Notes under the pieces: model-generated
Database searches by the model: none
What the model was told of the DNA's origin: nothing
What the model saw: only the letters and a program-made list of their open reading frames with translations
Translations under genes and position numbers: made by a program
Part shown: positions 1,632 to 58,414 of the stretch, piece by piece
How the letters are laid out: each line of letters opens with the position of its first letter
How positions within the stretch are numbered: position 1 is the stretch's first letter
DNA from: Octopus bimaculoides
Lineage: Eukaryota
NCBI RefSeq assembly: GCF_001194135.2
Contig: NC_068985.1
Span: forward strand, 44,207,697-44,271,696
Length of the DNA stretch: 64,000 bases
Reading direction: 5' to 3'

Positions 1632-2080
1632 CATGTGGGTATCCTTCACTGCATTTTCCATTGACAATCACTGTAGATCAGCCAACAGTAACTTGTTTCT
1701 CTACTCTTCTTTTAAAAATGAAACTCTAAATTACAAAATATTAACCTCTTAACATATTATCCCATTTTTTTCCATTCAGAGATGTCTGGCAAATACATAT
1801 TTGAATGAAAATATACATTCACTGTTCTCTGAGGTATCTGTCAATTATTTCTAACCCAAAATACATCGTTCATGATGTTATTCCCATTTTCTATCAGTAA
1901 CTATTAACAACTATCATTTCTGTCAGTAAGTTTATGATAAATCATAACTAATCCAAAATATTTTGTGTACTTATTCTTCCTTATATACAGATTCAAAAGA
2001 GATAATCAAAAAATACATTCTTTGCATGGAAATTGAAAAAAAAATGTGTTATGTTAAGAGATTAATTGGCTTTTGCCATT

Positions 2081-2331
2081 ACAGTTCTATATTTAAGAGA
2101 TGAGGAATTATGTACATTATTTACATTTGACGGATATTTGTCCTCATCTTGTTTGCTGTTAACACAACGTTTTGGCTGATACACCCTCCAGCCTTCATCA
2201 GGTGTCTTGAGATATTTTTCGTTGTTATTATTATTATTATTCAGGTCACTGCCTGGAATCAAACTCGGAATCTTGGGGTTAGTAGCCCGCGCTCTTAACC
2301 CCAAGATTACGAGTTCAATTCTAAGCAGTGA

Positions 2332-2362
<31 letters not shown>

Positions 2363-2486
2363 GACAGCGAAAAGTACCTTAGGAATGAGAACCCAGGTTC
2401 GAAATTTCCCCAAAACACCTGATGAAGGCTGCGTGGTGTTAACAGCAAACAAGATGAGAACAAATATCCGTCAAATGTAAATAATG
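2081..2486. mobile_element. Palindromic (head-to-head) tRNA-head/(AAT)n/hammerhead element, copy A1
   Basis: Left arm 2081-2300 is the reverse complement of right arm 2297-2486. Flanked by tggcttttgccatt (2067-2080) and tggctttgccatt (2485-2497), a probable TSD. Homologous to 26776-27296. Confidence 0.85.
2161..2206 (-). ncRNA. Minimal type I hammerhead ribozyme motif (G12A-decayed copy)
   Basis: Minus strand reads GACAC-CTGATGA-A-GGCTG-gagggtgtat-CAGCC-aAA-ACGT-T-GTGTT. Helix I is GACAC/GTGTT, helix II is 5 bp, helix III is the palindrome ACGT. G12 lost by a CpG-type transition at 2173. Confidence 0.7.
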
Positions 2487-2741
2487 GCTTTGCCATTGCT
2501 TACAATATCAATCAAAATAACATTACTGTGCAAGTGAACAGTGAGCCACCCACATACTACACAATAACTCACTCCCATTTGATGGAGAGAATGAGATAAT
2601 GTGAAGCACAGACATTTGATTACCACAAACAAATCATCTGTGCAGGTAGTTCAGCAAGAAATTGTGGAAATCCTCATCTGTTGTCTGTGACAGGAGGGTC
2701 CACCATGTATATATATATGTGTATGTGTGTGTGTGTGTTAA

Positions 2742-3060
2742 GGCGTGTGGCTTAGTGGTTAGGGCATTCAGCTGACGATTGTAAGGTCGTGAGTTCGATT
2801 CCCGGCGACGTGTTGTGTCCTTGAGCAAGACACTTTATTTCACATTGCTCCAGTCCACTCAGCTGGCAAAAATGAGTTGTACTTGTATTTCAAAGGGCCG
2901 ACCTTCACACACTATGTGTCATGCTGAGTCTCCCCGAGAACTGCGTTAGGGGTACAAGTGTCTGTGGATTGCTCAGTCACTTGCATGTTAATTTCATGAG
3001 CAAGCTGTTCCGTTGATCGTATCAGCTGGGACCCTTGTCGTCGTAATCGATGGAGTGCTC
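2742..3060 (+). mobile_element. tRNA-derived CORE-type SINE
   Basis: A box (tggcttagtgg), B box (gttcgattc), CORE-like gtgttgtgtccttgagcaagacacttt...ttgctccagtccactcagctg segment. Related heads at 1425, 11450 and 62875. Confidence 0.8.
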
Positions 3061-5089: not shown

Positions 5090-5506
5090 TCAATCAGGAG
5101 AGGGAGGCACTTTCCAATTCATCAACAGGAACTTAGCCATATCCATACAACTGCTGAAAATTTCAGATCTAGAATTCAGCAGTGAGTTAGAGTTCTTAGA
5201 TCTGAAAGAGATCTGAGTTCTTTCAGCTATGCATAAGGTACATTTTTTGAATCATTAACATATGGTGTGGATTTTTTTACTATTTCCCCACTTTATTGTA
5301 TGTGGTGTGGCGTTCGATTTCAAGACCCATATGTCGCTAGCCAACTTAGTAGCTTTACTTTTGTCTCTGTGTCAGAAGGAAGATATGTGATTAGCATAGC
5401 GATTTTTGAATTCTCTTTCACATAGTCCAATATAGCTCTCCTTATCAGGTGTGTCATCATCTAGCATTGCTGTAATGTCTACCTCATATATGACGAATTT
5501 AATCAT
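5090..5506 (-). pseudogene. Penelope-like element GIY-YIG endonuclease C-terminal relic
   Basis: Manual translation: MIKFVIYEVDITAMLDDDTPDKESYIGLCEREFKNRYANHISSF*HRDKSKATKLASDIWVLKSNATPHTIKW/EIVKKSTPYVNDS/KKCTLCIAERTQISFRSKNSNSLLNSRSEIFSSCMDMAKFLLMNWKVPPSPD*. Contains VIY...YIG, the R-x3-H motif, CxxC and LLNxRxE typical of PLE endonucleases. One TGA stop and two compensating frameshifts. Confidence 0.85.
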
Positions 5507-5554
5507 ACTTCATTGGCCAAGCAGAATGGTTCCTGGGTCTTGACAGTTACAACT

Positions 5555-6052
5555 GGGAGTGGGCCCAGTGCTCAACTGGTACTTATTTTATTGATGAAAG
5601 GCAAAGTCCACCTTGGTAGAATTTGAACTTAGAAAGTAAAGACAGACTAAATGTTGCTAAGTATTGTGCCCAACATACTAACAGTTCTTACTAAAGCTTG
5701 TCTCTTTAGTAAGAAAATATTGGTTTTAAATTTTGGCACAAGGCCAGCAATTTTGGGTGATGAGGTAAGTCGATTACCTTGACCCCCAGCATTCAAATGG
5801 TATCAATTTTATAAACCCCAAAAGGAATGAAAGACAAAGTCAACCACAGCAGAATGCGAAGACGGACAAAATGCCATTAAGGATTATGTCGATTACATCG
5901 ACCCCGGTGCGTAACTGGTACTTAATTTATCGACCCCGAAAGGATGAAAGGCAAAGTTGACCTCGGCGGAATTTGAACTCAGAATGTAAAGACAGACGAA
6001 AATTTGCTAAGCAATTTGCCTGGCATGCTAACGGTTCTGCCAGCTCACCGCC
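5555..6052 (-). mobile_element. Three adjacent OR-type SINE fragments
   Basis: Repeated reverse complement of the ggcgagctggcagaaacgttagc...aaattccgccgaggtcgactttgcctttcatcc consensus seen intact at 22310. Confidence 0.75.
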
Positions 6053-6059
6053 AATGTAT

Positions 6060-6462
6060 CATCATCATCATCATTTAACGTCCATTGTCCATGCTGGCAT
6101 GGGTTGGACGGTTTGACTGGGCTGGCACACTGGAAGGCTGCACCAGGCTCCAGTCTGATTTGGCATGTTTTTTACAGCTGGATGTCCTTCCTAATGCCAA
6201 CCACTCTGAGAGTGTAATAGGTGCTTTTACGTGTCATTTGCATGACACCGGTATCTGCTATGACCACGATTTTGTTCGGCTTGATGGCTCTTCTTCTTAA
6301 GCATGACATAATGCCAAAGGCCTTGGTAATTGCCTCTGTAAAACCCAACACTCGAAAGGAACTTGGCTACTTTGCCTCAATAAGGCCCAACGCTTGAAAG
6401 GAACTCAGCCACCTCGCCTCTATGAGGCCCAACACTCGAACACTCAAAAGGAACTCAGCCAC
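6060..6462 (-). mobile_element. RTE LINE 3' UTR with (GAT)n tail and ~41-bp internal tandem repeats
   Basis: (CAT)n followed by ttaacgtccattgtccatgctggcatgggttggacgg, the same tail as the RT-linked copy at 34681-35479. The motif ccaacactcgaaaggaactcagccac recurs ~3 times. Confidence 0.8.
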
Positions 6463-18155: not shown

Positions 18156-18439
18156 CAGTAGTAGATAGATTAATAAAAATAGGTTGTCATTATTTGGAAG
18201 ATATGGTAAAAAAATTACAGGTAGAATGTTGAAGGGAAAAATATTTTATCATGTGACACAGATCTCATGTATAAACATTGTATGTAAATAAACATTGCAT
18301 ATGTATGTAAAGTGAGTGTATACATACTCATGTGTATGAGTTTATATATATATGTACATATGAATGTATGTATATATATATATATATGTATGTTTGTTTT
18401 TGTATGCATGTATGTATATGTATGTATATATATGAATAT

Positions 18440-18722
18440 ATGCCACCCGCCCTGGACTGGCTCTTGTGCGGGTGGCACATGGGATGCACCATTTTGAGCG
18501 TGGCCGTTGCCAGTACCGCCTGACTGGCACTCGTGCAGGTGACACATAAAAGCACCCACTACACTCTTGGAGTGGTTGGCGTTAGGAAGGGCATCCAGCT
18601 GTAGAAACTCTGCCAAATTAGATTGGAGCCTGGTGTTGCCATCCGGTTTCACCAGTCCTCAGTCAAATCGTCCAACCCATTCTAGCATGGAAAGCGGACG
18701 TTAAACGATGATGATGATGATG
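18440..18722 (+). mobile_element. RTE LINE 3' end, young copy
   Basis: Near-consensus 3' UTR ending ttaaacgatgatgatgatgat. Confidence 0.85.
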
Positions 18723-21524: not shown

Positions 21525-21710
21525 CATCATCATCATCATCGTTTAACGTCCGCTTTCCATGCTAGCATGGGTTGGACGATTTGACTGAGGACTGGTGAAA
21601 CCGGATGGCAACACCAGCCTCCAATCTAATTTGGCAGAGTTTCTACAGCTGGATGCCCTTCCTAACGCCAACCACTCCGAGAGTGTAGTGGGTGCTTTTA
21701 CGTGTCACAC
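21525..21710 (-). mobile_element. RTE LINE 3' end
   Basis: (CAT)n-gtttaacgtccgctttccatgctagcatggg. Confidence 0.85.
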
Positions 21711-21837
21711 ACACAAACCAGCGTCAACAGATGTTGGCCTATATGTGTATATGTATGATGTCTTTCTATCACTGATGCTGGAATGTCAAAGTACTTCTCA
21801 TTCTGAGATTTCTGCTTCCCTGCATCTAAGATTGTCC

Positions 21838-21870
<33 letters not shown>

Positions 21871-22309
21871 ACGTTGTTTGTTCATTCTTCTGTTTTACAC
21901 CTGTTCTTTCTTCACTGCCATAGAATGAACAGGTAGTTATTTGGGGCAGAATTTTTACAACCAGATGCTCTTTTTGTTGCCAACTCTTTCTTGTTTTCCA
22001 AATACAGTAGCTTTTATTCCACTACTTTGAAAATTCAAAGCTACAGAATGGAATGTTCACTGAAAATGGAACTGTTTTGTTTTTATTTATTCATTTTTTT
22101 GTTTGATTTCACTCAGATGATCTTGTAAAGTGAGAAACGACAACATTTGTGCAGATGTGCATCTGTACTTTTCTTCTTTCTCTCTCATAAAACTGGCCTC
22201 CATACATTTACTATTTACCAACTTCTCTCATAAGGCACTGGTCAACTAGAGCCTATAGCAGTAAACAGTTTCACCTACAACAAGTGTCTTCCAAGAATGT
22301 ATGTACATG

Positions 22310-23496: not shown

Positions 23497-24339
23497 AAAC
23501 CACTTGGCTCTTTCTGAACTGTTCTTGGCTTTCTACACAGGTTTCTGGGATAGATTGACACACACATTGAATGTCCTAGCTGATAACGTGGAATCTTAAT
23601 CATGGCCAATCATGGTTGGCCAGACAGTTATGGCCAAGACATCCCCTTCAAATCTGTTTACTATCTTAAGAAAACAGAAGGAAATATTTGATAATGCAAT
23701 CCTAGATGCACTATAATTAGAGGAAAGACTGGATACTCATGACTAGAACACCCTTTAATCATAGGTTAGCTTTATCAGGCGGTCAAATAACAAGAACATT
23801 CTTCAAAAAATCACAGGCCTCCATTGACCTACCACAACCTGGTATTCTCTTCGTCATCAATTACTGTAGTTAAATAAGCAAATGAAAGAGAATCTGTATG
23901 TAGTTGCTTAATTTCCCTCAAATCACTGCATCACCACTAAGAAAAAAAAAGACGATGCTATCCTCATTATACAAAAAGGCAGGACAGTCACGGCTGGAAT
24001 TCCATTGATCATAGATCTATTGGATTCAGGACTGACCTGGGTTAATGGCAATAGCTTGCAGTAAATTTCAATAACCATCACCATCTTTATCAATAATCAA
24101 TTCCTGCCAATTCATTCAATAGCCAATCACTTCCTCACATAATCAGTTGTTATCCTGTTTCGCAACTTCAAATTAAACTTCCACTAAATCATTCTCAGCC
24201 AGTTCCTGCAAAGTTATTACACAATTTCAGTATTCATTGCCTGCTTATATTTCATCTCTGTCTCCTGTTATATAACTGGCATGTGTATCAATACATCTAT
24301 TCTTCTCTGTAGTATAACACACACTTATTCTATACATAC

Positions 24340-26673: not shown

Positions 26674-26775
26674 AGTTTTACTGCATCTATATTTTGAGTT
26701 CTCTCACTTTTAGCAGCCTGCAGACACAGAACACAAGCATAATTCATATACATATATTTGTATGTATATATAAGT

Positions 26776-27092
26776 ACTGTTCTATATTTTAAGATGAGGA
26801 ATTCTGTACATTATTTACATTGGACGGATAGGTGTCCTCATCTTGTTTGGTGTTACCACAATGTTTCGGCTAATTTACTCTCCAGCCTTCATCAGGTGTC
26901 CTGGTAGAATTTTCAACTCAACCCTGGGTTCTCATTCCTATGCTATATTTTGCTGATATTATTATTATTATTATTTATTCAAGGCACTGCCTGGAATTGA
27001 ACTATATGCCCGTGGGCATATAGTGTAATGGTTAAGAGTGCGGGCTACTAACCACAAAATCGTGAGTTCAATTCCAGGCAGTGCCTTGAATA

Positions 27093-27127
<35 letters not shown>

Positions 27128-27296
27128 TAATAATAACATCAGCAAAAAATACCTTAGGAACGAGAACCCAGGGTTGTGTTCAAAATTCTACCAGGACATC
27201 TGATGAAGGCTGGAGAGTAAATCAGTCAAAATGTTGTGGTAGCAACAAACAAGATGAGGTCACATATCCGTCCAATGTAAATAATGTAAATAATGT
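26776..27296. mobile_element. Palindromic tRNA-head/(AAT)n/hammerhead element, copy A2
   Basis: Axis at actatatgccc-gt-gggcatatagt (27001-27024). The right arm has a complete tRNA-like head (27014-27085: A box tagtgtaatgg, B box gttcaattc), (AAT)n and an HHR at 27195-27240. The left arm is the inverted copy with a deletion in the head. Confidence 0.85.
26855..26900 (-). ncRNA. Minimal type I hammerhead motif (core intact, helix III ACAT)
   Basis: GACAC-CTGATGA-A-GGCTG-gagagtaaat-TAGCC-GAA-ACAT-T-GTGGT. The ACGT palindrome has decayed to ACAT. Confidence 0.7.
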
Positions 27297-27373
27297 AAAG
27301 TACTTTCATGTTTTCTTCAATATTCATGTTTTAGCAATATTAACCAACATTTGTGCTCCACAATTGATAACCT

Positions 27374-27416
<43 letters not shown>

Positions 27417-28934
27417 ATGTTCCACTGTTATATAAGTATTGTCATTGGTTTCCAACTTATTGTGCAAACATGTTAGGTCATGGAGGAATATTCCCTTGCT
27501 TAGAAACAGGAAGGGCACCTGGCCATAGAAAATCTCTCTCAATGAATTCCATCTGAGCCATGCAAGCATGGAAAAATGGGCATTAAAACTATGATTTTAT
27601 ATACATATATATCGTCATCGTCATTGTTTAATATCTCTTTTCTATGTTGGAATATGTTGGAATGGGTTGGACAGTTTGGCAGGAGCTGGCTAGCTGGACA
27701 GTTGTACAGACTCCAATCATCTGTTTTGGCATGATTTCTTTGGTTGGATGCCCTTCCAAACATCAACCACTTTACAGAGTGTGCTGGATGCTTTTTACAT
27801 GCTACCAGCATAAGTGTAGTTTACATGGCACCAACATGAGTACATTTTATGTGGCACCTGCAACAACACACANNNNNNNNNNNNNNNNNNNNNNNNNNNN
27901 NNNNNNNNNNNNNNNNNNNNNNNNNNNNNNNNNNNNNNNNNNTATATATATATATATATATATAAATATATATATAAATATATATATAAAGGATATAAAG
28001 CATAAAATCTTTACCTAATCTTATATAACATAAACAAGTTTATTTCCTTCTACTAACAAAGAAAGAGAAAAATGCTTCCTTCCTAAAAGGGAAAATCAAT
28101 ATATATCGATCTGGTAATTATGGCTTGAAGCAAGAAGATTTGTATCCATCTAACTGTCACTCCTTGATAGGATGTCCAGTGTGAAACCACAGAGACACAA
28201 GAAAAAAAAAAAAAACAACAGAAAGAAAAGCGTCAACCAAAAGTACCAATGATAAACTAGGCTTAATATATTTAATATAAACAGTTTATAGAAAATTGAA
28301 AACCTCAGAAAAATTCCTCGCTCTTTATAACAAACAACTGTATTTTTTTTGTCTTGCAACCATATTCATTTATTTATTTTATTATGTTTTCGAAATTTCA
28401 ATTCTTCTTTCTATGTTGTTTCTGTTTCTAGTTTTTATCTGTCACTTTCTCTCACCAGCCCCTCTCAGAACGACCTACCATAGATTTATGACTTTGCTTT
28501 AGTGTATATGGCAGTGCTCAACTTTACCTTTACATTTAGTTCTTGTTCAATTTCTTTATTGCTTTTGCCCCCTACCCATCTGTTCTCACAGCCTCCCACT
28601 CAACAAAATGTTTCAAGAAAGCATAAAAATAAAAAAAGAATTATAACTAGAAACAACAACATGAGTTAAAAAAAGTCTCTGTGAGAATAGAGTTTATGGC
28701 GATACATTTAGAAGGCAAAAAAGAAAAAAAATATTACACCTGACCTCAAGAATCTTATCTGTCAAACAAGGAAGAATTATGCCAGTTAGGGAATATAAAA
28801 TAAACGTATTCTTGATATTGAAAATTTCTCTGGCAGAGCTGAACAACAACAATAAAAAAAGATACACAGTAAAAATATCAGATCAATGCTTAACTGATAC
28901 TTTTAAGTGTGTGTATGTGTGTGTGTGTGTAATG

Positions 28935-34680: not shown

Positions 34681-35479
34681 GATGACTGCGCTGGTATGGT
34701 CATGTGGCGAGAATGGATGAGGATAGCTGTGTGAAAAAGTGCTACACCCTAGTGGTTGAGGGAACCTGTGGAAGAGGTAGACCCAGGAAGACCTGGGATG
34801 AGGTGGTGAAGCACAACCTTCGAACATTAGGCCTCACCGAGGCAATGACTAGTGACCGAGACCTTTGGAAATTTGCAGTGCGTGAGAAGACCTGGCAAGC
34901 CAAGTGAGACCATAATCCGTGGCCTTTGCCAGGGGTGTAGCCAGCCCACTTATTCGTACCTTTACTTTACTGGACACTAAACTCTGTTTGCGAAAACCTG
35001 TTGTGGCAAGTGAAATTGAAATCAAATTCGATGACTGGCATCCATGCTAGTGGAGCGCTAAGAGACCATCCGAGCATGATTATTGCCAGAGCAGCTGACT
35101 GGCTTCCATGCCGGTGGCATGTGAAAAGCACCATTCGAGCATGATCGTTACCAGCGTTGCCTTACTGGCACTTGTGCCAGTGGCACATGATCAAAACATT
35201 TGAGCGAGGTCGTTGCCAGTGCTGCTGGACTGGCCCCTGTGCAGGTGGCACATAAAAAACACCATTTGAGTGTGGCCATTGCCAGTACTGTCTGACTGGC
35301 CCTCATGCACCCACTACTCTCGGATTGGTTGGTGTTAGGAAGGGCATCCAGCTGTAGAAACTCTGTCAGATCAGACTGGAGCCTGGTGCAGCCATCTGGT
35401 TTGCCAGTCCTCAGTCAAATCATCTAACCCATGCCAGCATGGAAAGCAGACATTAAATGATGATGATGATGATGGTGAT
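34681..35479 (+). mobile_element. 5'-truncated RTE LINE: RT-ORF C-terminus + 3' UTR + (GAT)n
   Basis: 34686-34907 encodes LRWYGHVARMDEDSCVKKCYTLVVEGTCGRGRPRKTWDEVVKHNLRTLGLTEAMTSDRDLWKFAV* (RTE WYGHV..GRPRKTW motif). It is followed by the 3' UTR shared with the many short tails in this window. Confidence 0.92.
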
Positions 35480-57295: not shown

Positions 57296-58414
57296 CAGTA
57301 GTAATACCCCACTTTATGAGGACCCACTTTACGAGACCCCAGGTTTACGACTTATTTTGCAAGCACAAGGTCCAAATTTTGAATGAAGTGCAAAAGTTTC
57401 TATCATAACAAATGCTTCTGCATGTTACCGAAAAATTTATAGAGAGTGAAAAAAAGCTTCTTCTAAGCAAACAATTCTAGACTTCATCATCATCTTCATC
57501 ATTTAGTGTCCGTTGTCCATGTTGGCATGGGTTGGACGGTTTGATTGGGCTGGTATGCTGGAGGGCTGTACCAGGATCCAGTCTGATTGGGCATGGTTTT
57601 CTACAGCTGGATGCCCTTCCTAATATCAAACACTCCAAGAATGTAATGGTGCTTTTATGTGCCACCAGCACAAGCGCCATTTGTGTGACACCGGTATCTG
57701 CAATGACTGCGATTTTGCTCAGTTTGATGGGTCTTCTCAAGCACAAAATAATGCCAAAAGTCTTGGTCATTGCCTCTGTGAGGTTCAAAGTTTGAAGGTC
57801 ATGCTTCACTACCTCATCCCATGTCTTCCTCTACCACAGGTCCCCTCCACAGTCAGAGATTGGCACTTCTTTGCACAACTGTCCTCGTCCATATGCATCA
57901 CATGACCATACCAGCACAGTTGTCTCTCTTTCATACCACATTTGAATCCTCTTATGCCTAACTTTGCTCTTAAGATACTTACACTCTGTTGAACATGCAC
58001 ACTGACATTGAACATCCAGCAAAGCAAATGTCAGTGTCTAGACTTGTTTTTCAAAAAGATCTACAAGTCTGTCTCTGAGTGCTTGTGAATCAGCGATCGA
58101 AACTACTACCGAGATGGTGTGCATGAGTCTAGTGCGAGTGAAAGTGATTCAGAAAACGATTATAATAATAATATCTTTTATTATAAACGATCTTGACAAT
58201 CTTTTTACTTTACATAAAATATGCTTTACATTCTACTGTTGTTTTATTGCCATTTGTTTATGAGTATTATAAATTTCACAGGTAAAATATTTTTCTAGGA
58301 TTGAATTATGATTTATAACATTGCTACTATGGGAAATCATTGCTCTGCTTTATGAGTTTTCACTTTATGAGCGGTCTCCACAAACAAATTAACCTGTATA
58401 TCGAGACATTACTG
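57296..58414 (+). mobile_element. pogo/Tigger-like DNA transposon relic inside an OR-type SINE
   Basis: TA-CAGTA...TACTG-TA ends, subterminal (a/g)ctttatgag/actttacgag repeats, and the C-terminal relic YRKIYRE*KKASSKQTILDF. Confidence 0.65.
57481..58021 (-). mobile_element. RTE LINE fragment nested in the Tigger-like element
   Basis: Encodes KLGIRGFKCGMKERQLCWYGHVMHMDEDSCAKKCQSLTVEGTCGRGR, followed by the 3' UTR and (GAT)n. Confidence 0.88.

What the first reader, a model, noticed from the sequence alone, without database searches (positions are those of the whole stretch)
26776..27296. tRNA-headed, ribozyme-carrying element (SINE/retrozyme hybrid)
Seen: 27014-27085 is tRNA-like (A and B boxes, gggcat/gtgcct acceptor-like stem, poor T-stem, so not a functional tRNA). 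It is followed by (AAT)n, ~60 nt of body, an HHR ~220 nt from the 5' end, and a short 3' segment. No TTTT Pol III terminator occurs on the sense strand of any of the four arms. The same head-(AAT)n-body junction appears in all four arms at two loci 24.7 kb apart. Inference: a Pol III transcript whose end is set by self-cleavage and which is retrotransposed by a Penelope-type RT/EN, analogous to Schistosoma SM-alpha; possibly undescribed in cephalopods.
Basis: partly seen in the sequence, partly recalled or inferred. Interest (0 to 1): 0.85.

Follow-up and report, generated by a model that had tools for sequence, protein, structure and literature searches.

The report
Octopus SINE carrying a Penelope-type hammerhead
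The region is a head-to-head double copy of a roughly 270-base octopus SINE that joins a tRNA-like promoter head to a decayed Penelope-type minimal hammerhead ribozyme, and its insertion pattern points to Penelope-type copying enzymes, but the ribozyme does not set the element's end.

Summary
26778-27297 is one insertion flanked by AAGTAC. It consists of two inverted copies of a ~270-nt unit: tRNA-like head, (AAT)n, body, hammerhead motif, 3' hairpin. A second foldback lies at 2081-2485.

I found four more copies, in O. bimaculoides and O. vulgaris. All keep part of the head. Their consensus fits every published hallmark of the Penelope-like-element (PLE) minimal hammerhead: GACAC|CUGAUGA|A|GGCUG..CAGCC|GAA|ACGU|U^GUGUU. 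None of 4000 shuffled windows matched as well. Rfam misses it.

All four arms in the window are mutated, mostly at CpGs.

Insertions show 6-14-bp target duplications, 5' truncation, and head-to-head inverted copies. A 31-34-nt tail sits on one arm only. These are the structural signatures described for PLE insertions.

Every tail-bearing copy continues about 85-95 nt past the predicted cleavage site to a fixed 3' terminus. Self-cleavage therefore does not set the end. One subfamily with a broken ribozyme still spread. There are no tandem arrays, so it is not a retrozyme.

No PLE partner sequence could be obtained. Pol III transcription and cleavage are untested.

Verdict: a real element, a new variant of a known kind, of moderate interest.

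The parts
26772..26777 (.). Left target-site duplication AAGTAC of locus 1
   Evidence: An identical hexamer lies at 27298-27303, directly outside both element ends.
26778..27012 (-). Arm B: a complete unit on the minus strand with the 3' tail; its head has a 43-nt internal deletion
   Evidence: Alignment of arms and outside copies; nhmmer 2.1e-68.
26778..26808 (-). 3' tail (TACAGAATTCCTCATCTTAAAATATAGAACA), present on this arm only
   Evidence: Absent from arm A. Present in D, E, F, G and H-minus. Coordinates.
26792..26843 (-). 3' terminal hairpin: AGAUGAGGA (26835-26843) pairs with UCCUCAUCU (26792-26800)
   Evidence: The 9-bp stem appears in the MFE fold of the consensus unit. Coordinates.
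26855..26900 (-). Minimal hammerhead remnant of arm B. All catalytic core bases are intact. G16.2>A and 1.4 U>G weaken helices III and I
26958..26975 (-). (AAT)6 internal microsatellite of arm B
26980..27012 (-). Head remnant of arm B (CGGGCATATAGT/TCAATTCCAGGCAGTGCCTTG)
27013..27297 (+). Arm A: an inverted partner unit with a full head. It stops in ...AATAATGTAAAG, at the start of the tail
27013..27088 (+). tRNA-like head with A-box-like and B-box-like motifs
   Evidence: Direct reading and coordinates. No ARAGORN or Rfam tRNA call.
27093..27137 (+). (AAT)n internal microsatellite of arm A
   Evidence: TRF: 14.7 copies.
27195..27240 (+). Minimal hammerhead remnant of arm A, inactivated by G12>A, C15.2>U and 1.4 U>G. 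Predicted cleavage site 27235|27236
27298..27303 (.). Right target-site duplication AAGTAC of locus 1
2068..2080 (.). Left TSD of locus 2 (GGCTTTTGCCATT)
   Evidence: Matches GGCTTTGCCATT at 2486-2497.
2081..2288 (-). Arm D: a tail-bearing unit (tail 2081-2114). It is 5'-truncated inside the head and has an internal body deletion
2161..2206 (-). Minimal hammerhead remnant of arm D; the only defect is G12>A, at a CpG
2289..2485 (+). Arm C: an inverted partner unit without the tail, truncated at the mirror-image point of the head (4-nt loop 2287-2290)
2414..2440 (+). Hammerhead remnant of arm C, with a 19-nt deletion that removes the 3' strand of helix II and GAAA
2486..2497 (.). Right TSD of locus 2 (GGCTTTGCCATT)

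Best explanation
This is a family of roughly 270-nt non-autonomous retroposons (SINEs) of Octopus.

Each unit has these parts:
- a degenerate tRNA-derived head carrying Pol III A and B boxes;
- an internal (AAT)n;
- a ~55-nt body;
- a 46-nt type I minimal hammerhead of the Penelope-like-element (PLE) kind;
- a 3' hairpin (AGAUGAGGA/UCCUCAUCU);
- a fixed terminus ...UAUAGAAC(U)(GU).

Proposed life cycle:
1. Inferred: master copies are transcribed from the head by Pol III.
2. Shown by genomic copies: the uncleaved RNA is reverse-transcribed from its 3' terminus at a staggered chromosomal nick.
3. Inferred: the enzyme is a PLE RT/GIY-YIG endonuclease acting in trans, which recognises the PLE-like 3' module.
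4. Shown as structure, mechanism inferred: when the cDNA reaches the RNA 5' end or a stop inside the head, a second, inverted copy is often made. It is made either by snap-back on the cDNA or from a second template. This copy always ends about 30 nt short of the 3' terminus. The result is a foldback with a one-sided tail inside a single TSD.

The hammerhead is a module inherited from a PLE pseudo-LTR. It does not define the ends of the element and is not required in catalytically intact form for transposition.

The two loci in the window are old foldback insertions whose ribozymes have decayed, mainly by CpG transitions.
For: Unit structure and termini:
- Nine arms or copies at six loci in two species share the unit and its termini.
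- TSDs are 14 bp perfect (H), 12 bp (locus 2 and E) and 6 bp (locus 1).
- G is a 5'-truncated copy.

Foldbacks:
- The palindrome centre is at the exact unit 5' end with a 0-nt spacer in locus 1, F and H.
- In locus 2 it is at a symmetric internal point.
- The tail of 31-34 nt is on one arm only in locus 1, locus 2 and H.
- Craig et al. 2021 (PMC8557442) describe PLE insertions as 5'-truncated, often with an inverted copy at the 5' end and a 30-40-bp tail at one end only.

Hammerhead:
- The family consensus and copy F satisfy a min-HHR descriptor.
- The consensus shows every non-descriptor hallmark listed by Cervera & de la Pena 2014 (PMC4209133): an unpaired nucleotide after A9, G10.1-C11.1, palindromic 15.2-16.2 (ACGU), a 5-bp helix I and a 5-6-bp helix II.
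- That paper also reports pairs of min-HHRs on opposite strands 100-700 bp apart.
- Chance expectation is 0.007 per shuffled window, and 0 of 4000 shuffles were as good as the consensus.

Context: PLEs are abundant and recently active in Octopus (PMC13282606; PMC8967140).

Head: copy F has the perfect A box TGGCGTAGTGG, and the B box AGTTCGATTCC lies 44 nt downstream.
Against: - No PLE RT/EN or pseudo-LTR sequence from Octopus could be retrieved, so the 3' module has not been matched to any autonomous partner.
- A heuristic motif scan found no PLE ORF in about 250 kb of octopus DNA.
- Rfam hammerhead and tRNA models and ARAGORN give no hits.
- The helices show no compensatory changes in 8 copies.
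- No tandem or pseudo-LTR arrangement was seen.
- The sample is small: six loci, of which E and F may not be independent because they share 44 nt of 3' flank.
This would fit a LINE-dependent CORE-type SINE.
Confidence: 0.55

Rival explanations
1. This is an ordinary LINE-dependent tRNA-derived SINE, possibly one of the 'tRNA-Core' SINEs that dominate octopus genomes. Its hammerhead-like stretch is a captured PLE fragment or a relic with no role. The foldbacks arise from hairpin or template-switch accidents of a LINE reverse transcriptase.
For: - It has a tRNA-like head, variable TSDs and 5' truncation.
- LINEs (RTE, CR1, Dong-R4) are abundant in Octopus, and LINE ORF2 fragments lie in the window.
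Against: - The motif meets all min-HHR hallmarks, which so far are described in PLEs.
- Three to four of five to six insertions are inverted duplications with a one-sided tail of about 30 nt, which is the described PLE signature. LINE twin priming gives inversions, not duplications.
- There is no A-rich or microsatellite 3' end.
Confidence: 0.25
2. One reading: a Pol III transcript whose 3' end is made by hammerhead self-cleavage, and that cleaved RNA is the retrotransposition template.
For: - There is no T4 terminator inside any arm.
- The hammerhead motif is on the same strand as the head.
Against: - All tail-bearing copies (B, D, E, F, G, H-minus) extend about 85-95 nt 3' of the predicted GUU^G site to a common terminus next to the TSD.
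- PLE min-HHRs show no monomer cleavage in vitro (PMC4209133).
- A subfamily with a 3-nt deletion at the cleavage site spread to two species.
- Lack of internal terminators is normal for SINEs.
Confidence: 0.04
3. A non-LTR retrozyme: tandem hammerhead-bearing repeats that are expressed as self-cleaved circular RNAs and reinserted.
For: - It has a type I hammerhead, a size of about 270 nt and low GC.
- Animal retrozymes have been linked to PLE pseudo-LTRs (bioRxiv 10.64898/2026.07.22.740005; PMC7229834).
Against: - There are no head-to-tail repeats with a unit-length period at either locus or in the outside copies.
- Copies have fixed 5' and 3' termini that are not permuted around the cleavage site.
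- The hammerhead is the minimal type, not the canonical type.
Confidence: 0.04
4. A MITE or foldback DNA transposon with ~230-bp terminal inverted repeats.
For: - The whole element folds into a near-perfect hairpin (-305 kcal/mol, z = -34.5).
- Rfam's only matches are MITE-like miRNA hairpin families.
Against: - The termini are asymmetric, with the tail on one side only.
- TSD length varies (6, 12, 12 and 14 bp).
- Monomeric (E) and 5'-truncated (G) copies share the same 3' end.
- The two arms of H belong to different subfamilies.
Confidence: 0.03

Closest known systems
Minimal hammerheads (min-HHR) of Penelope-like elements (Cervera & de la Pena 2014, PMC4209133)
   Same: - Type I order, CUGAUGA and GAAA boxes, and an unpaired nucleotide between A9 and 10.1.
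- G10.1-C11.1, no loop 3, and a palindromic ACGU in place of helix III.
- A short helix I (5 bp) and a helix II of 5-6 bp.
- Occurrence as pairs on opposite strands a few hundred bp apart.
- High copy-to-copy variability.
   Different: - Here the motif sits in a short element with a tRNA-like Pol III head, not in a recognisable pseudo-LTR next to an RT/EN ORF.
- H17 is U (GUU).
- Activity is untested.
- No cephalopod example was found in the literature searched.
Schistosoma SM-alpha SINE-like retroposon (Ferbeyre et al. 1998; cited in PMC8490949 and PMC6155905)
   Same: A short, dispersed, non-autonomous, SINE-like element that carries a type I hammerhead on its sense strand. From my own knowledge, it also has Pol III-type promoter boxes.
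   Different: - SM-alpha has a canonical, very fast hammerhead with loop-loop tertiary contacts and a real (short) helix III, which Rfam-type models detect.
- The octopus motif is the minimal PLE type.
- SM-alpha is largely tandem or satellite-like, whereas this family is dispersed as monomers and head-to-head foldbacks.
PLE insertion architecture and non-autonomous PLE derivatives (Craig et al. 2021, PMC8557442)
   Same: - 5' truncation.
- An inverted copy abutting the 5' end.
- A 30-40-bp tail at only one end.
- Non-autonomous elements that share 3' ends with autonomous PLEs (for example MRC1 of Chlamydomonas).
   Different: - No partial tandem or pseudo-LTR was seen.
- The inverted copy is not shorter at its 5' end than the direct copy; the junction is symmetric.
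- The element has its own Pol III-type head.
Metazoan non-LTR retrozymes (PMC7229834; bioRxiv 10.64898/2026.07.22.740005)
   Same: Small non-coding elements with a type I hammerhead, thought to depend on PLEs.
   Different: Retrozymes are tandem repeats processed to circular RNAs. This family is not tandem and has fixed linear ends.
Octopus tRNA-derived SINEs (OK, OR1, OR2; 'tRNA-Core'/'tRNA-Deu' classes; Ohshima & Okada 1994, PMC8967140)
   Same: A tRNA-type head in the same host genus, and a short stretch resembling the CORE domain (memory-based lead).
   Different: I could not compare sequences because no Repbase, Dfam or SINEBase copy was at hand. None of those SINEs is described, in the papers read, as carrying a hammerhead or as inserting as foldbacks.

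Membership tests
PLE-type minimal hammerhead (min-HHR) | Catalytic boxes CUGANGA ... GAAA ... UH in type I order | tested here: met
   Met by the family consensus and by copy F (L002 18790-18835, minus strand). In the window only arm B keeps all core bases. A and D have G12>A, and C has a deletion.
PLE-type minimal hammerhead (min-HHR) | Unpaired nucleotide between A9 and 10.1 | tested here: met
   An A follows CUGAUGA in all 8 aligned copies.
PLE-type minimal hammerhead (min-HHR) | G10.1-C11.1 closing pair of helix II | tested here: met
   G-C in 6 of 8 copies and G-U in 2 of 8 (pair 18-37).
PLE-type minimal hammerhead (min-HHR) | Helix III absent or tiny, with palindromic 15.2-16.2 | tested here: met
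   The consensus is GAA-ACGU-U. The CpG decays to AUGU or ACAU in individual copies.
PLE-type minimal hammerhead (min-HHR) | Short helix I (4-5 bp) and longer helix II | tested here: met
   Helix I is GACAC/GUGUU (5 bp). Helix II is GGCUG/CAGCC (5 bp, 6 with G-U). Both appear in the MFE of the isolated 56-mer.
PLE-type minimal hammerhead (min-HHR) | Helices supported by compensatory changes within a family | tested here: inconclusive
   0 double changes; 87.5% of cells are paired, no better than shuffles. There are only 8 related, decaying copies.
PLE-type minimal hammerhead (min-HHR) | Location in a PLE pseudo-LTR next to an RT/GIY-YIG ORF | not testable with these tools
   No octopus PLE sequence could be fetched. 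None was seen in about 250 kb.
PLE-type minimal hammerhead (min-HHR) | Self-cleavage (as a dimer) | not testable with these tools
   Requires an in vitro assay.
tRNA-derived SINE | 5' head with Pol III A and B boxes at tRNA spacing, at the 5' terminus of full-length copies | tested here: met
   TGGCGTAGTGG matches TRGCNNAGTGG in F and H-plus. AGTTCGATTCC matches 10 of 11. The spacing is 44 nt. The TSD or palindrome centre abuts (T)GGGCATATGG.
tRNA-derived SINE | Head recognisable as a tRNA cloverleaf | tested here: not met
   ARAGORN finds nothing down to -ps80. The Rfam tRNA model has no hit at E<=10 on 101 nt or on the best-preserved heads. ARAGORN (default threshold) also called no tRNA at another tRNA-like SINE head in the window (~2741).
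tRNA-derived SINE | Short dispersed non-coding copies with TSDs and 5' truncation | tested here: met
tRNA-derived SINE | 3' end shared with an autonomous partner | not testable with these tools
   No TE library or partner sequence was available.
PLE-type insertion architecture | Inverted copy adjacent to the 5' end, forming inverted repeats | tested here: met
   Seen in locus 1, locus 2, F and H.
PLE-type insertion architecture | 30-40-bp tail at only one end of the insertion | tested here: met
   The tail is 31-34 nt and lies on the tail-bearing arm only in locus 1, locus 2 and H.
PLE-type insertion architecture | Partial tandem copies (pseudo-LTRs) | tested here: not met
   No head-to-tail copies.
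Non-LTR retrozyme | Tandem repeats of the hammerhead-bearing unit | tested here: not met
   TRF finds only microsatellites and a 9-nt repeat.
MITE / foldback DNA transposon | Symmetric terminal inverted repeats reaching both ends, and a fixed TSD length | tested here: not met
   The tail is one-sided and TSDs are 6, 12, 12 and 14 bp.
Canonical type I hammerhead (Rfam Hammerhead_1, SM-alpha type) | Match to the covariance model with helix III and loop contacts | tested here: not met
   No hammerhead family hit at E<=10 at either locus.

The most novel reading that the evidence does not exclude
The minimal hammerhead may act not as an end-maker but as an RNA dimerisation device. Its palindromic ACGU/helix III interface would pair two SINE RNAs in one PLE RT/EN particle. 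Both nicks of the target would then prime cDNA synthesis, one at the 3' terminus and one about 30 nt inside it. The two cDNAs would be joined head-to-head.

This would explain three things:
- the frequent foldbacks;
- the constant one-sided tail;
- the finding that the two arms of the O. vulgaris copy come from different subfamilies.

If so, a 270-nt SINE would be a tractable model for the still unexplained tandem/inverted insertion products of Penelope-like elements.
Probability: 0.12. Interest if true: 0.75.

Novelty: new variant of a known kind. Interest (0 to 1): 0.5.

Why it matters
- SINEs are the largest repeat class in octopus genomes and are usually assumed to be LINE-driven. A SINE family built on a PLE 3' module would show that Penelope-like elements also drive SINE amplification there.
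- It would add cephalopods to the animals with hammerhead-bearing retroposons.
- The element reproduces the enigmatic PLE insertion products (inverted duplication, one-sided tail) in only about 0.5 kb. Junctions, TSDs and template choice can therefore be read directly from many genomic copies, which gives a practical handle on the unresolved PLE integration mechanism.
- The genomic copies give evidence on an open question, namely what PLE hammerheads are for. Here the ribozyme does not define element ends, and a broken version still spread.
- Each foldback insertion is a ready-made dsRNA hairpin of about 230 bp if transcribed. This could matter in an animal with very active RNA editing, but that is speculation.

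Tried and rejected
- Rfam at gathering threshold on the window and at E<=10 on both loci, the head alone, the whole window and the O. vulgaris heads. There were no hammerhead, tRNA or other ribozyme hits. The only matches were hairpin and microsatellite look-alikes of miRNA families.
- My first reading by eye, which looked for long helices I and III, wrongly suggested there was no hammerhead. I corrected this after reading the min-HHR definition.
- ARAGORN on the window, on all loci and on isolated heads: nothing above a 60% threshold.
- DNA pattern scans of the metagenome and viral collections: no copies.
- Searching the spurious 144-aa ORF across locus 2: no hits.
- Three O. bimaculoides UniRef proteins were not on record for contig look-up.
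- The 842-aa ORF in L004 has no Pfam match.
- A heuristic six-frame scan for PLE RT/GIY-YIG motifs in about 250 kb: nothing.
- The weak nhmmer hit in L004 is only an (AAT)n tract. L006 13076-13131 has a 29-nt partial match to the 3' region of unclear meaning.
- Covariation test: uninformative.
- Full-text search for element sequence strings: none found.
- Lunse et al. 2017 and Ferbeyre et al. 1998 are not held.
- Two independent nested insertions as the origin of the foldbacks: rejected, because a single TSD flanks both arms at three loci.
- Segmental duplication of locus 1 to locus 2: rejected, because the flanks are unrelated and the TSDs differ.
Full report
**What is at the coordinates**

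The stretch 26778-27297 is one long inverted repeat. Its arms are 26801-26975 / 27120-27294 at 89% complementarity, and the inner 47 nt are 100% complementary. The symmetry centre lies between 27012 and 27013 (...ATATGCCCG|TGGGCATAT...). The hexamer AAGTAC flanks it on both sides, at 26772-26777 and 27298-27303.

A second, similar foldback lies at 2081-2485. It is about 66% identical, with arms separated by 4 nt. It is flanked by GGCTTT(T)GCCATT at 2068-2080 and 2486-2497. The sequences beyond these repeats are unrelated, so the two loci are separate insertions and not a segmental duplication.

Aligning the four arms gives a common unit:
- a tRNA-like head;
- (AAT)n;
- a body of about 55 nt;
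- a CUGAUGA...GAAA stretch;
- a 3' region ending ...AATGTAAATAATG.

Both minus-strand arms carry an extra 31-34 nt, TACA.AATTCCTCATCT(C)TTAAATATAGAAC(..). Both plus-strand arms lack it.

- the head at 27013-27088;
- (AAT)n at 27093-27137;
- the motif at 27195-27240, with the predicted cleavage site 222 nt from the head start;
- no T4 run in any arm;
- the same junctions in four arms, 24,697 bp apart.

**Getting more copies**

No tool here holds cephalopod DNA directly. DNA pattern scans of the metagenome and viral collections found nothing. A search with the spurious ORF across locus 2 also found nothing.

I therefore searched with ORFs of other repeats in the window. These hit Octopus vulgaris and O. 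bimaculoides proteins, which places the window in Octopus. I then fetched the DNA around those genes:
- about 160 kb of O. vulgaris;
- 27 kb (excluding N) of O. bimaculoides.

An HMM of the unit found four more copies:

| Copy | Location | Structure |
|---|---|---|
| E | L002 ~23752-24022 | Monomer with a full head, flanked by the 12-bp repeat GAGCTT(G/C)CTCAC |
| G | L002 ~5462-5687 | 5'-truncated monomer |
| F | L002 18703-18938 | Tail-bearing unit with a head-to-head junction ...CCATATGCCCA\|TGGGCATATGG... and a 32-nt inverted piece |
| H | L009 11980-12496, O. vulgaris | Complete foldback with two full heads, a 0-nt spacer and a perfect 14-bp TSD CATTACTAGTTTTA |

All nine arms or copies retain part of the head. 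All six arms that reach the 3' end carry the tail, so the tail is the true 3' end of the unit.

**The hammerhead**

Rfam finds no hammerhead at any threshold. My own first look for conventional helices I and III also failed.

Cervera & de la Pena 2014 define the minimal hammerhead of Penelope-like elements (PLEs) as follows:
- type I;
- no loop 3;
- palindromic 15.2-16.2;
- a helix I of 4-5 bp;
- a longer helix II;
- an unpaired nucleotide after A9;
- a G10.1-C11.1 pair.

They add that such motifs can occur as pairs on opposite strands 100-700 bp apart. The family consensus reads GACAC|CUGAUGA|A|GGCUG-GAGGGUAUAU-CAGCC|GAA|ACGU|U^GUGUU. It meets every one of these points.

A descriptor I wrote accepts the consensus and copy F. 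In 4000 dinucleotide shuffles of the window it fired 29 times in total, and never with helices as good as the consensus plus G10.1-C11.1. That is roughly 3e-5 expected for a 267-nt unit on both strands. Helices I and II also appear in the MFE fold of the isolated 56-mer.

There is no covariation support. Eight copies show no double changes, and pairing is no better than in shuffles. With so few related, decaying copies, this result is uninformative.

None of the four arms in the window has an intact motif:
- A has G12>A, C15.2>U and a helix I mismatch.
- B keeps the whole core but has G16.2>A and a helix I mismatch.
- C has a 19-nt deletion.
- D has only G12>A.

Most hits fall on the two CpGs of the motif (C11.1-G12 and C15.2-G16.2). 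That pattern is what neutral decay after insertion predicts.

**The head**

It looks like a tRNA, but no tool calls it one.

The better-preserved heads (F, H) have TGGCGTAGTGG, a perfect match to the A-box consensus TRGCNNAGTGG. AGTTCGATTCC, matching the B box at 10 of 11 positions, lies 44 nt downstream. Both consensus sequences are from my own knowledge. The head starts exactly where full-length copies start: the TSD of E, and the palindrome centres of locus 1, F and H.

That is the anatomy of a tRNA-derived SINE head. Pol III transcription itself is inferred.

**How it inserts**

These features are shown directly by the sequence:
- a fixed 3' terminus (within 2 nt);
- TSDs of 6, 12, 12 and 14 bp;
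- one 5'-truncated copy;
- in four of six loci, an inverted second copy joined at the 5' end inside the same TSD.

The junction is symmetric in every case. It lies at the exact unit 5' end in locus 1, F and H. In locus 2 it lies at a mirror-image point inside the head, where the head has a natural inverted repeat (GGTTAAGAG/CTACTAACC).

In locus 1, locus 2 and H the inverted arm stops within a few nucleotides of the same point, just before the tail. That point lies in the loop of a 3' hairpin formed by AGAUGAGGA and the tail's UCCUCAUCU.

Craig et al. 2021 describe PLE insertions in just these terms. They are strongly 5'-truncated, often have an inverted copy adjacent to the 5' end, and have a 30-40-bp tail often present at only one end. 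Those authors attribute these features to the unusual PLE endonuclease and RT.

Together with the PLE-type ribozyme and the abundance of PLEs in Octopus, this makes mobilisation by a PLE RT/EN the best-supported inference. No partner sequence could be obtained, so I put this at about 0.55.

**How the foldback forms**

Two sub-models remain.

*Snap-back of the cDNA on itself.* This fits the symmetric internal junction of locus 2. It also fits arms A and B being each other's closest relatives (89.2% against 81-85% to all others).

*A second template.* This fits H. Its tail-bearing arm shares GGGTG, CAGCT and a 3-nt deletion with copy G of the other species (92.8%), yet it is only 87.5% identical to its own partner arm.

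**What the ribozyme does not do**

The predicted cleavage site lies about 85-95 nt upstream of the 3' terminus in every tail-bearing copy. The templates that were reverse-transcribed were therefore uncleaved.

Cleavage would also separate the promoter head from the 3' recognition end. The published min-HHRs show no monomer cleavage.

G and H-minus are independent insertions in two species. They share a deletion that removes the cleavage-site register and a transversion in helix II. Their source copy must therefore have transposed with a dead ribozyme.

I conclude that the motif came along with a PLE-derived 3' module. If it has a role, that role is structural (recognition or dimerisation) and not end formation.

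**Rivals**

- *A LINE-dependent (possibly CORE-type) SINE.* This is the main alternative.
- *A retrozyme.* Excluded for these loci by the absence of tandem units.
- *A MITE.* Excluded by the one-sided tail, the variable TSDs and the monomeric copies, even though the element folds into a hairpin of -305 kcal/mol.

**Novelty**

The literature I searched describes several related things:
- PLE min-HHRs in many animals;
- the SM-alpha hammerhead SINE of schistosomes;
- non-LTR retrozymes;
- non-autonomous PLE derivatives.

It does not describe a cephalopod hammerhead, or a tRNA-headed SINE with a PLE min-HHR that inserts as foldbacks. I could not check Repbase, Dfam or SINEBase, so the family may already be deposited under a SINE name.

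I rate it a new variant of a known kind, of moderate interest.

Noticed in passing
L001 19488-19530 (minus strand; O. vulgaris OX597824.1): A second, unrelated candidate minimal hammerhead: ACCU|CUGAUGA|GAACC..GGUUU|GAAA|AUCGAU|UA^AGGU. It has an 8-nt palindrome (AAUCGAUU) in place of helix III. It has no other copy in about 250 kb. This suggests that other PLE-type ribozyme families exist in Octopus.
   Followed up: partly
L002 24025-24068 (+) and L002 18659-18702 (-): Copies E and F are each followed by the same 44 nt, GAGCTTC(C/T)TCACAGTTTCTATCTA(T/C)CAAATTCACTCACAAACTCT. This pattern occurs nowhere else in the sample. E and F lie 5 kb apart in opposite orientation and are each other's closest relatives (92.7%). 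Local inverted duplication, 3' transduction or a shared target are all possible, so they may not be independent insertions.
   Followed up: partly
window 26767-26780 and 27429-27442: A 14-nt direct repeat TATATAAGTA(C/T)TGT could be an alternative, longer TSD. That would bring 27304-27428, including a (TG)16 tract, into the insertion. It could also be a chance match in TA-rich DNA.
   Followed up: no
window 34686-34904 (+) and 57480-58030 (-): ORF fragments resembling the C-terminal end of a LINE ORF2 (LRWYGHVARMDEDS...GRPRKTWDEVV). They are 86% identical to an O. vulgaris hypothetical protein. They look like LINE remnants that could belong to a SINE partner.
   Followed up: partly
window, e.g. 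6079-6297, 18218-18658, 21589-21933, 35151-35414, 39079-39363, 44549-44989, 57481-57792: A very abundant octopus repeat gives ORF-like translations (...SSSSSFNVRFPCW...LQSDLAEFLQLDALPN...). It is annotated as hypothetical proteins in O. vulgaris and O. bimaculoides.
   Followed up: partly
window ~2741-2815 (+): Another tRNA-like SINE head lies 250 bp from locus 2: GGCGTGTGGCTTAGTGGTTAGGGCATTCAGCTGACGATTGTAAGGTCGTGAGTTCGATTCCCGG. It shares TAGTGGTTA and CGTGAGTTCGATTCC with the head studied here, and ARAGORN does not call it either.
   Followed up: no
L006 13076-13131 (minus strand; O. vulgaris): A 29-nt near-exact match to the unit's 3' region (ACAAATATCCATCAAATGTAAATCATGTA) is followed by a diverged end ...CAGAACTGG. 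It may be a fragment of a relative or of the partner's 3' end.
   Followed up: partly
window 27195-27240, 26855-26900, 2161-2206 and the outside copies: Recurrent parallel mutations fall at the two CpGs of the ribozyme (CCGAAA>CCAAAA or CTGAAA; ACGU>AUGU or ACAU). This indicates strong CpG decay in these repeats.
   Followed up: partly
species comparison: window + L002 versus L001, L003-L009: There are five loci of the family in about 89 kb of the window plus O. bimaculoides DNA, but only one in about 160 kb of O. vulgaris. The family seems much denser in the former, and the window is probably O. bimaculoides. The sample is small and this is unverified.
   Followed up: partly
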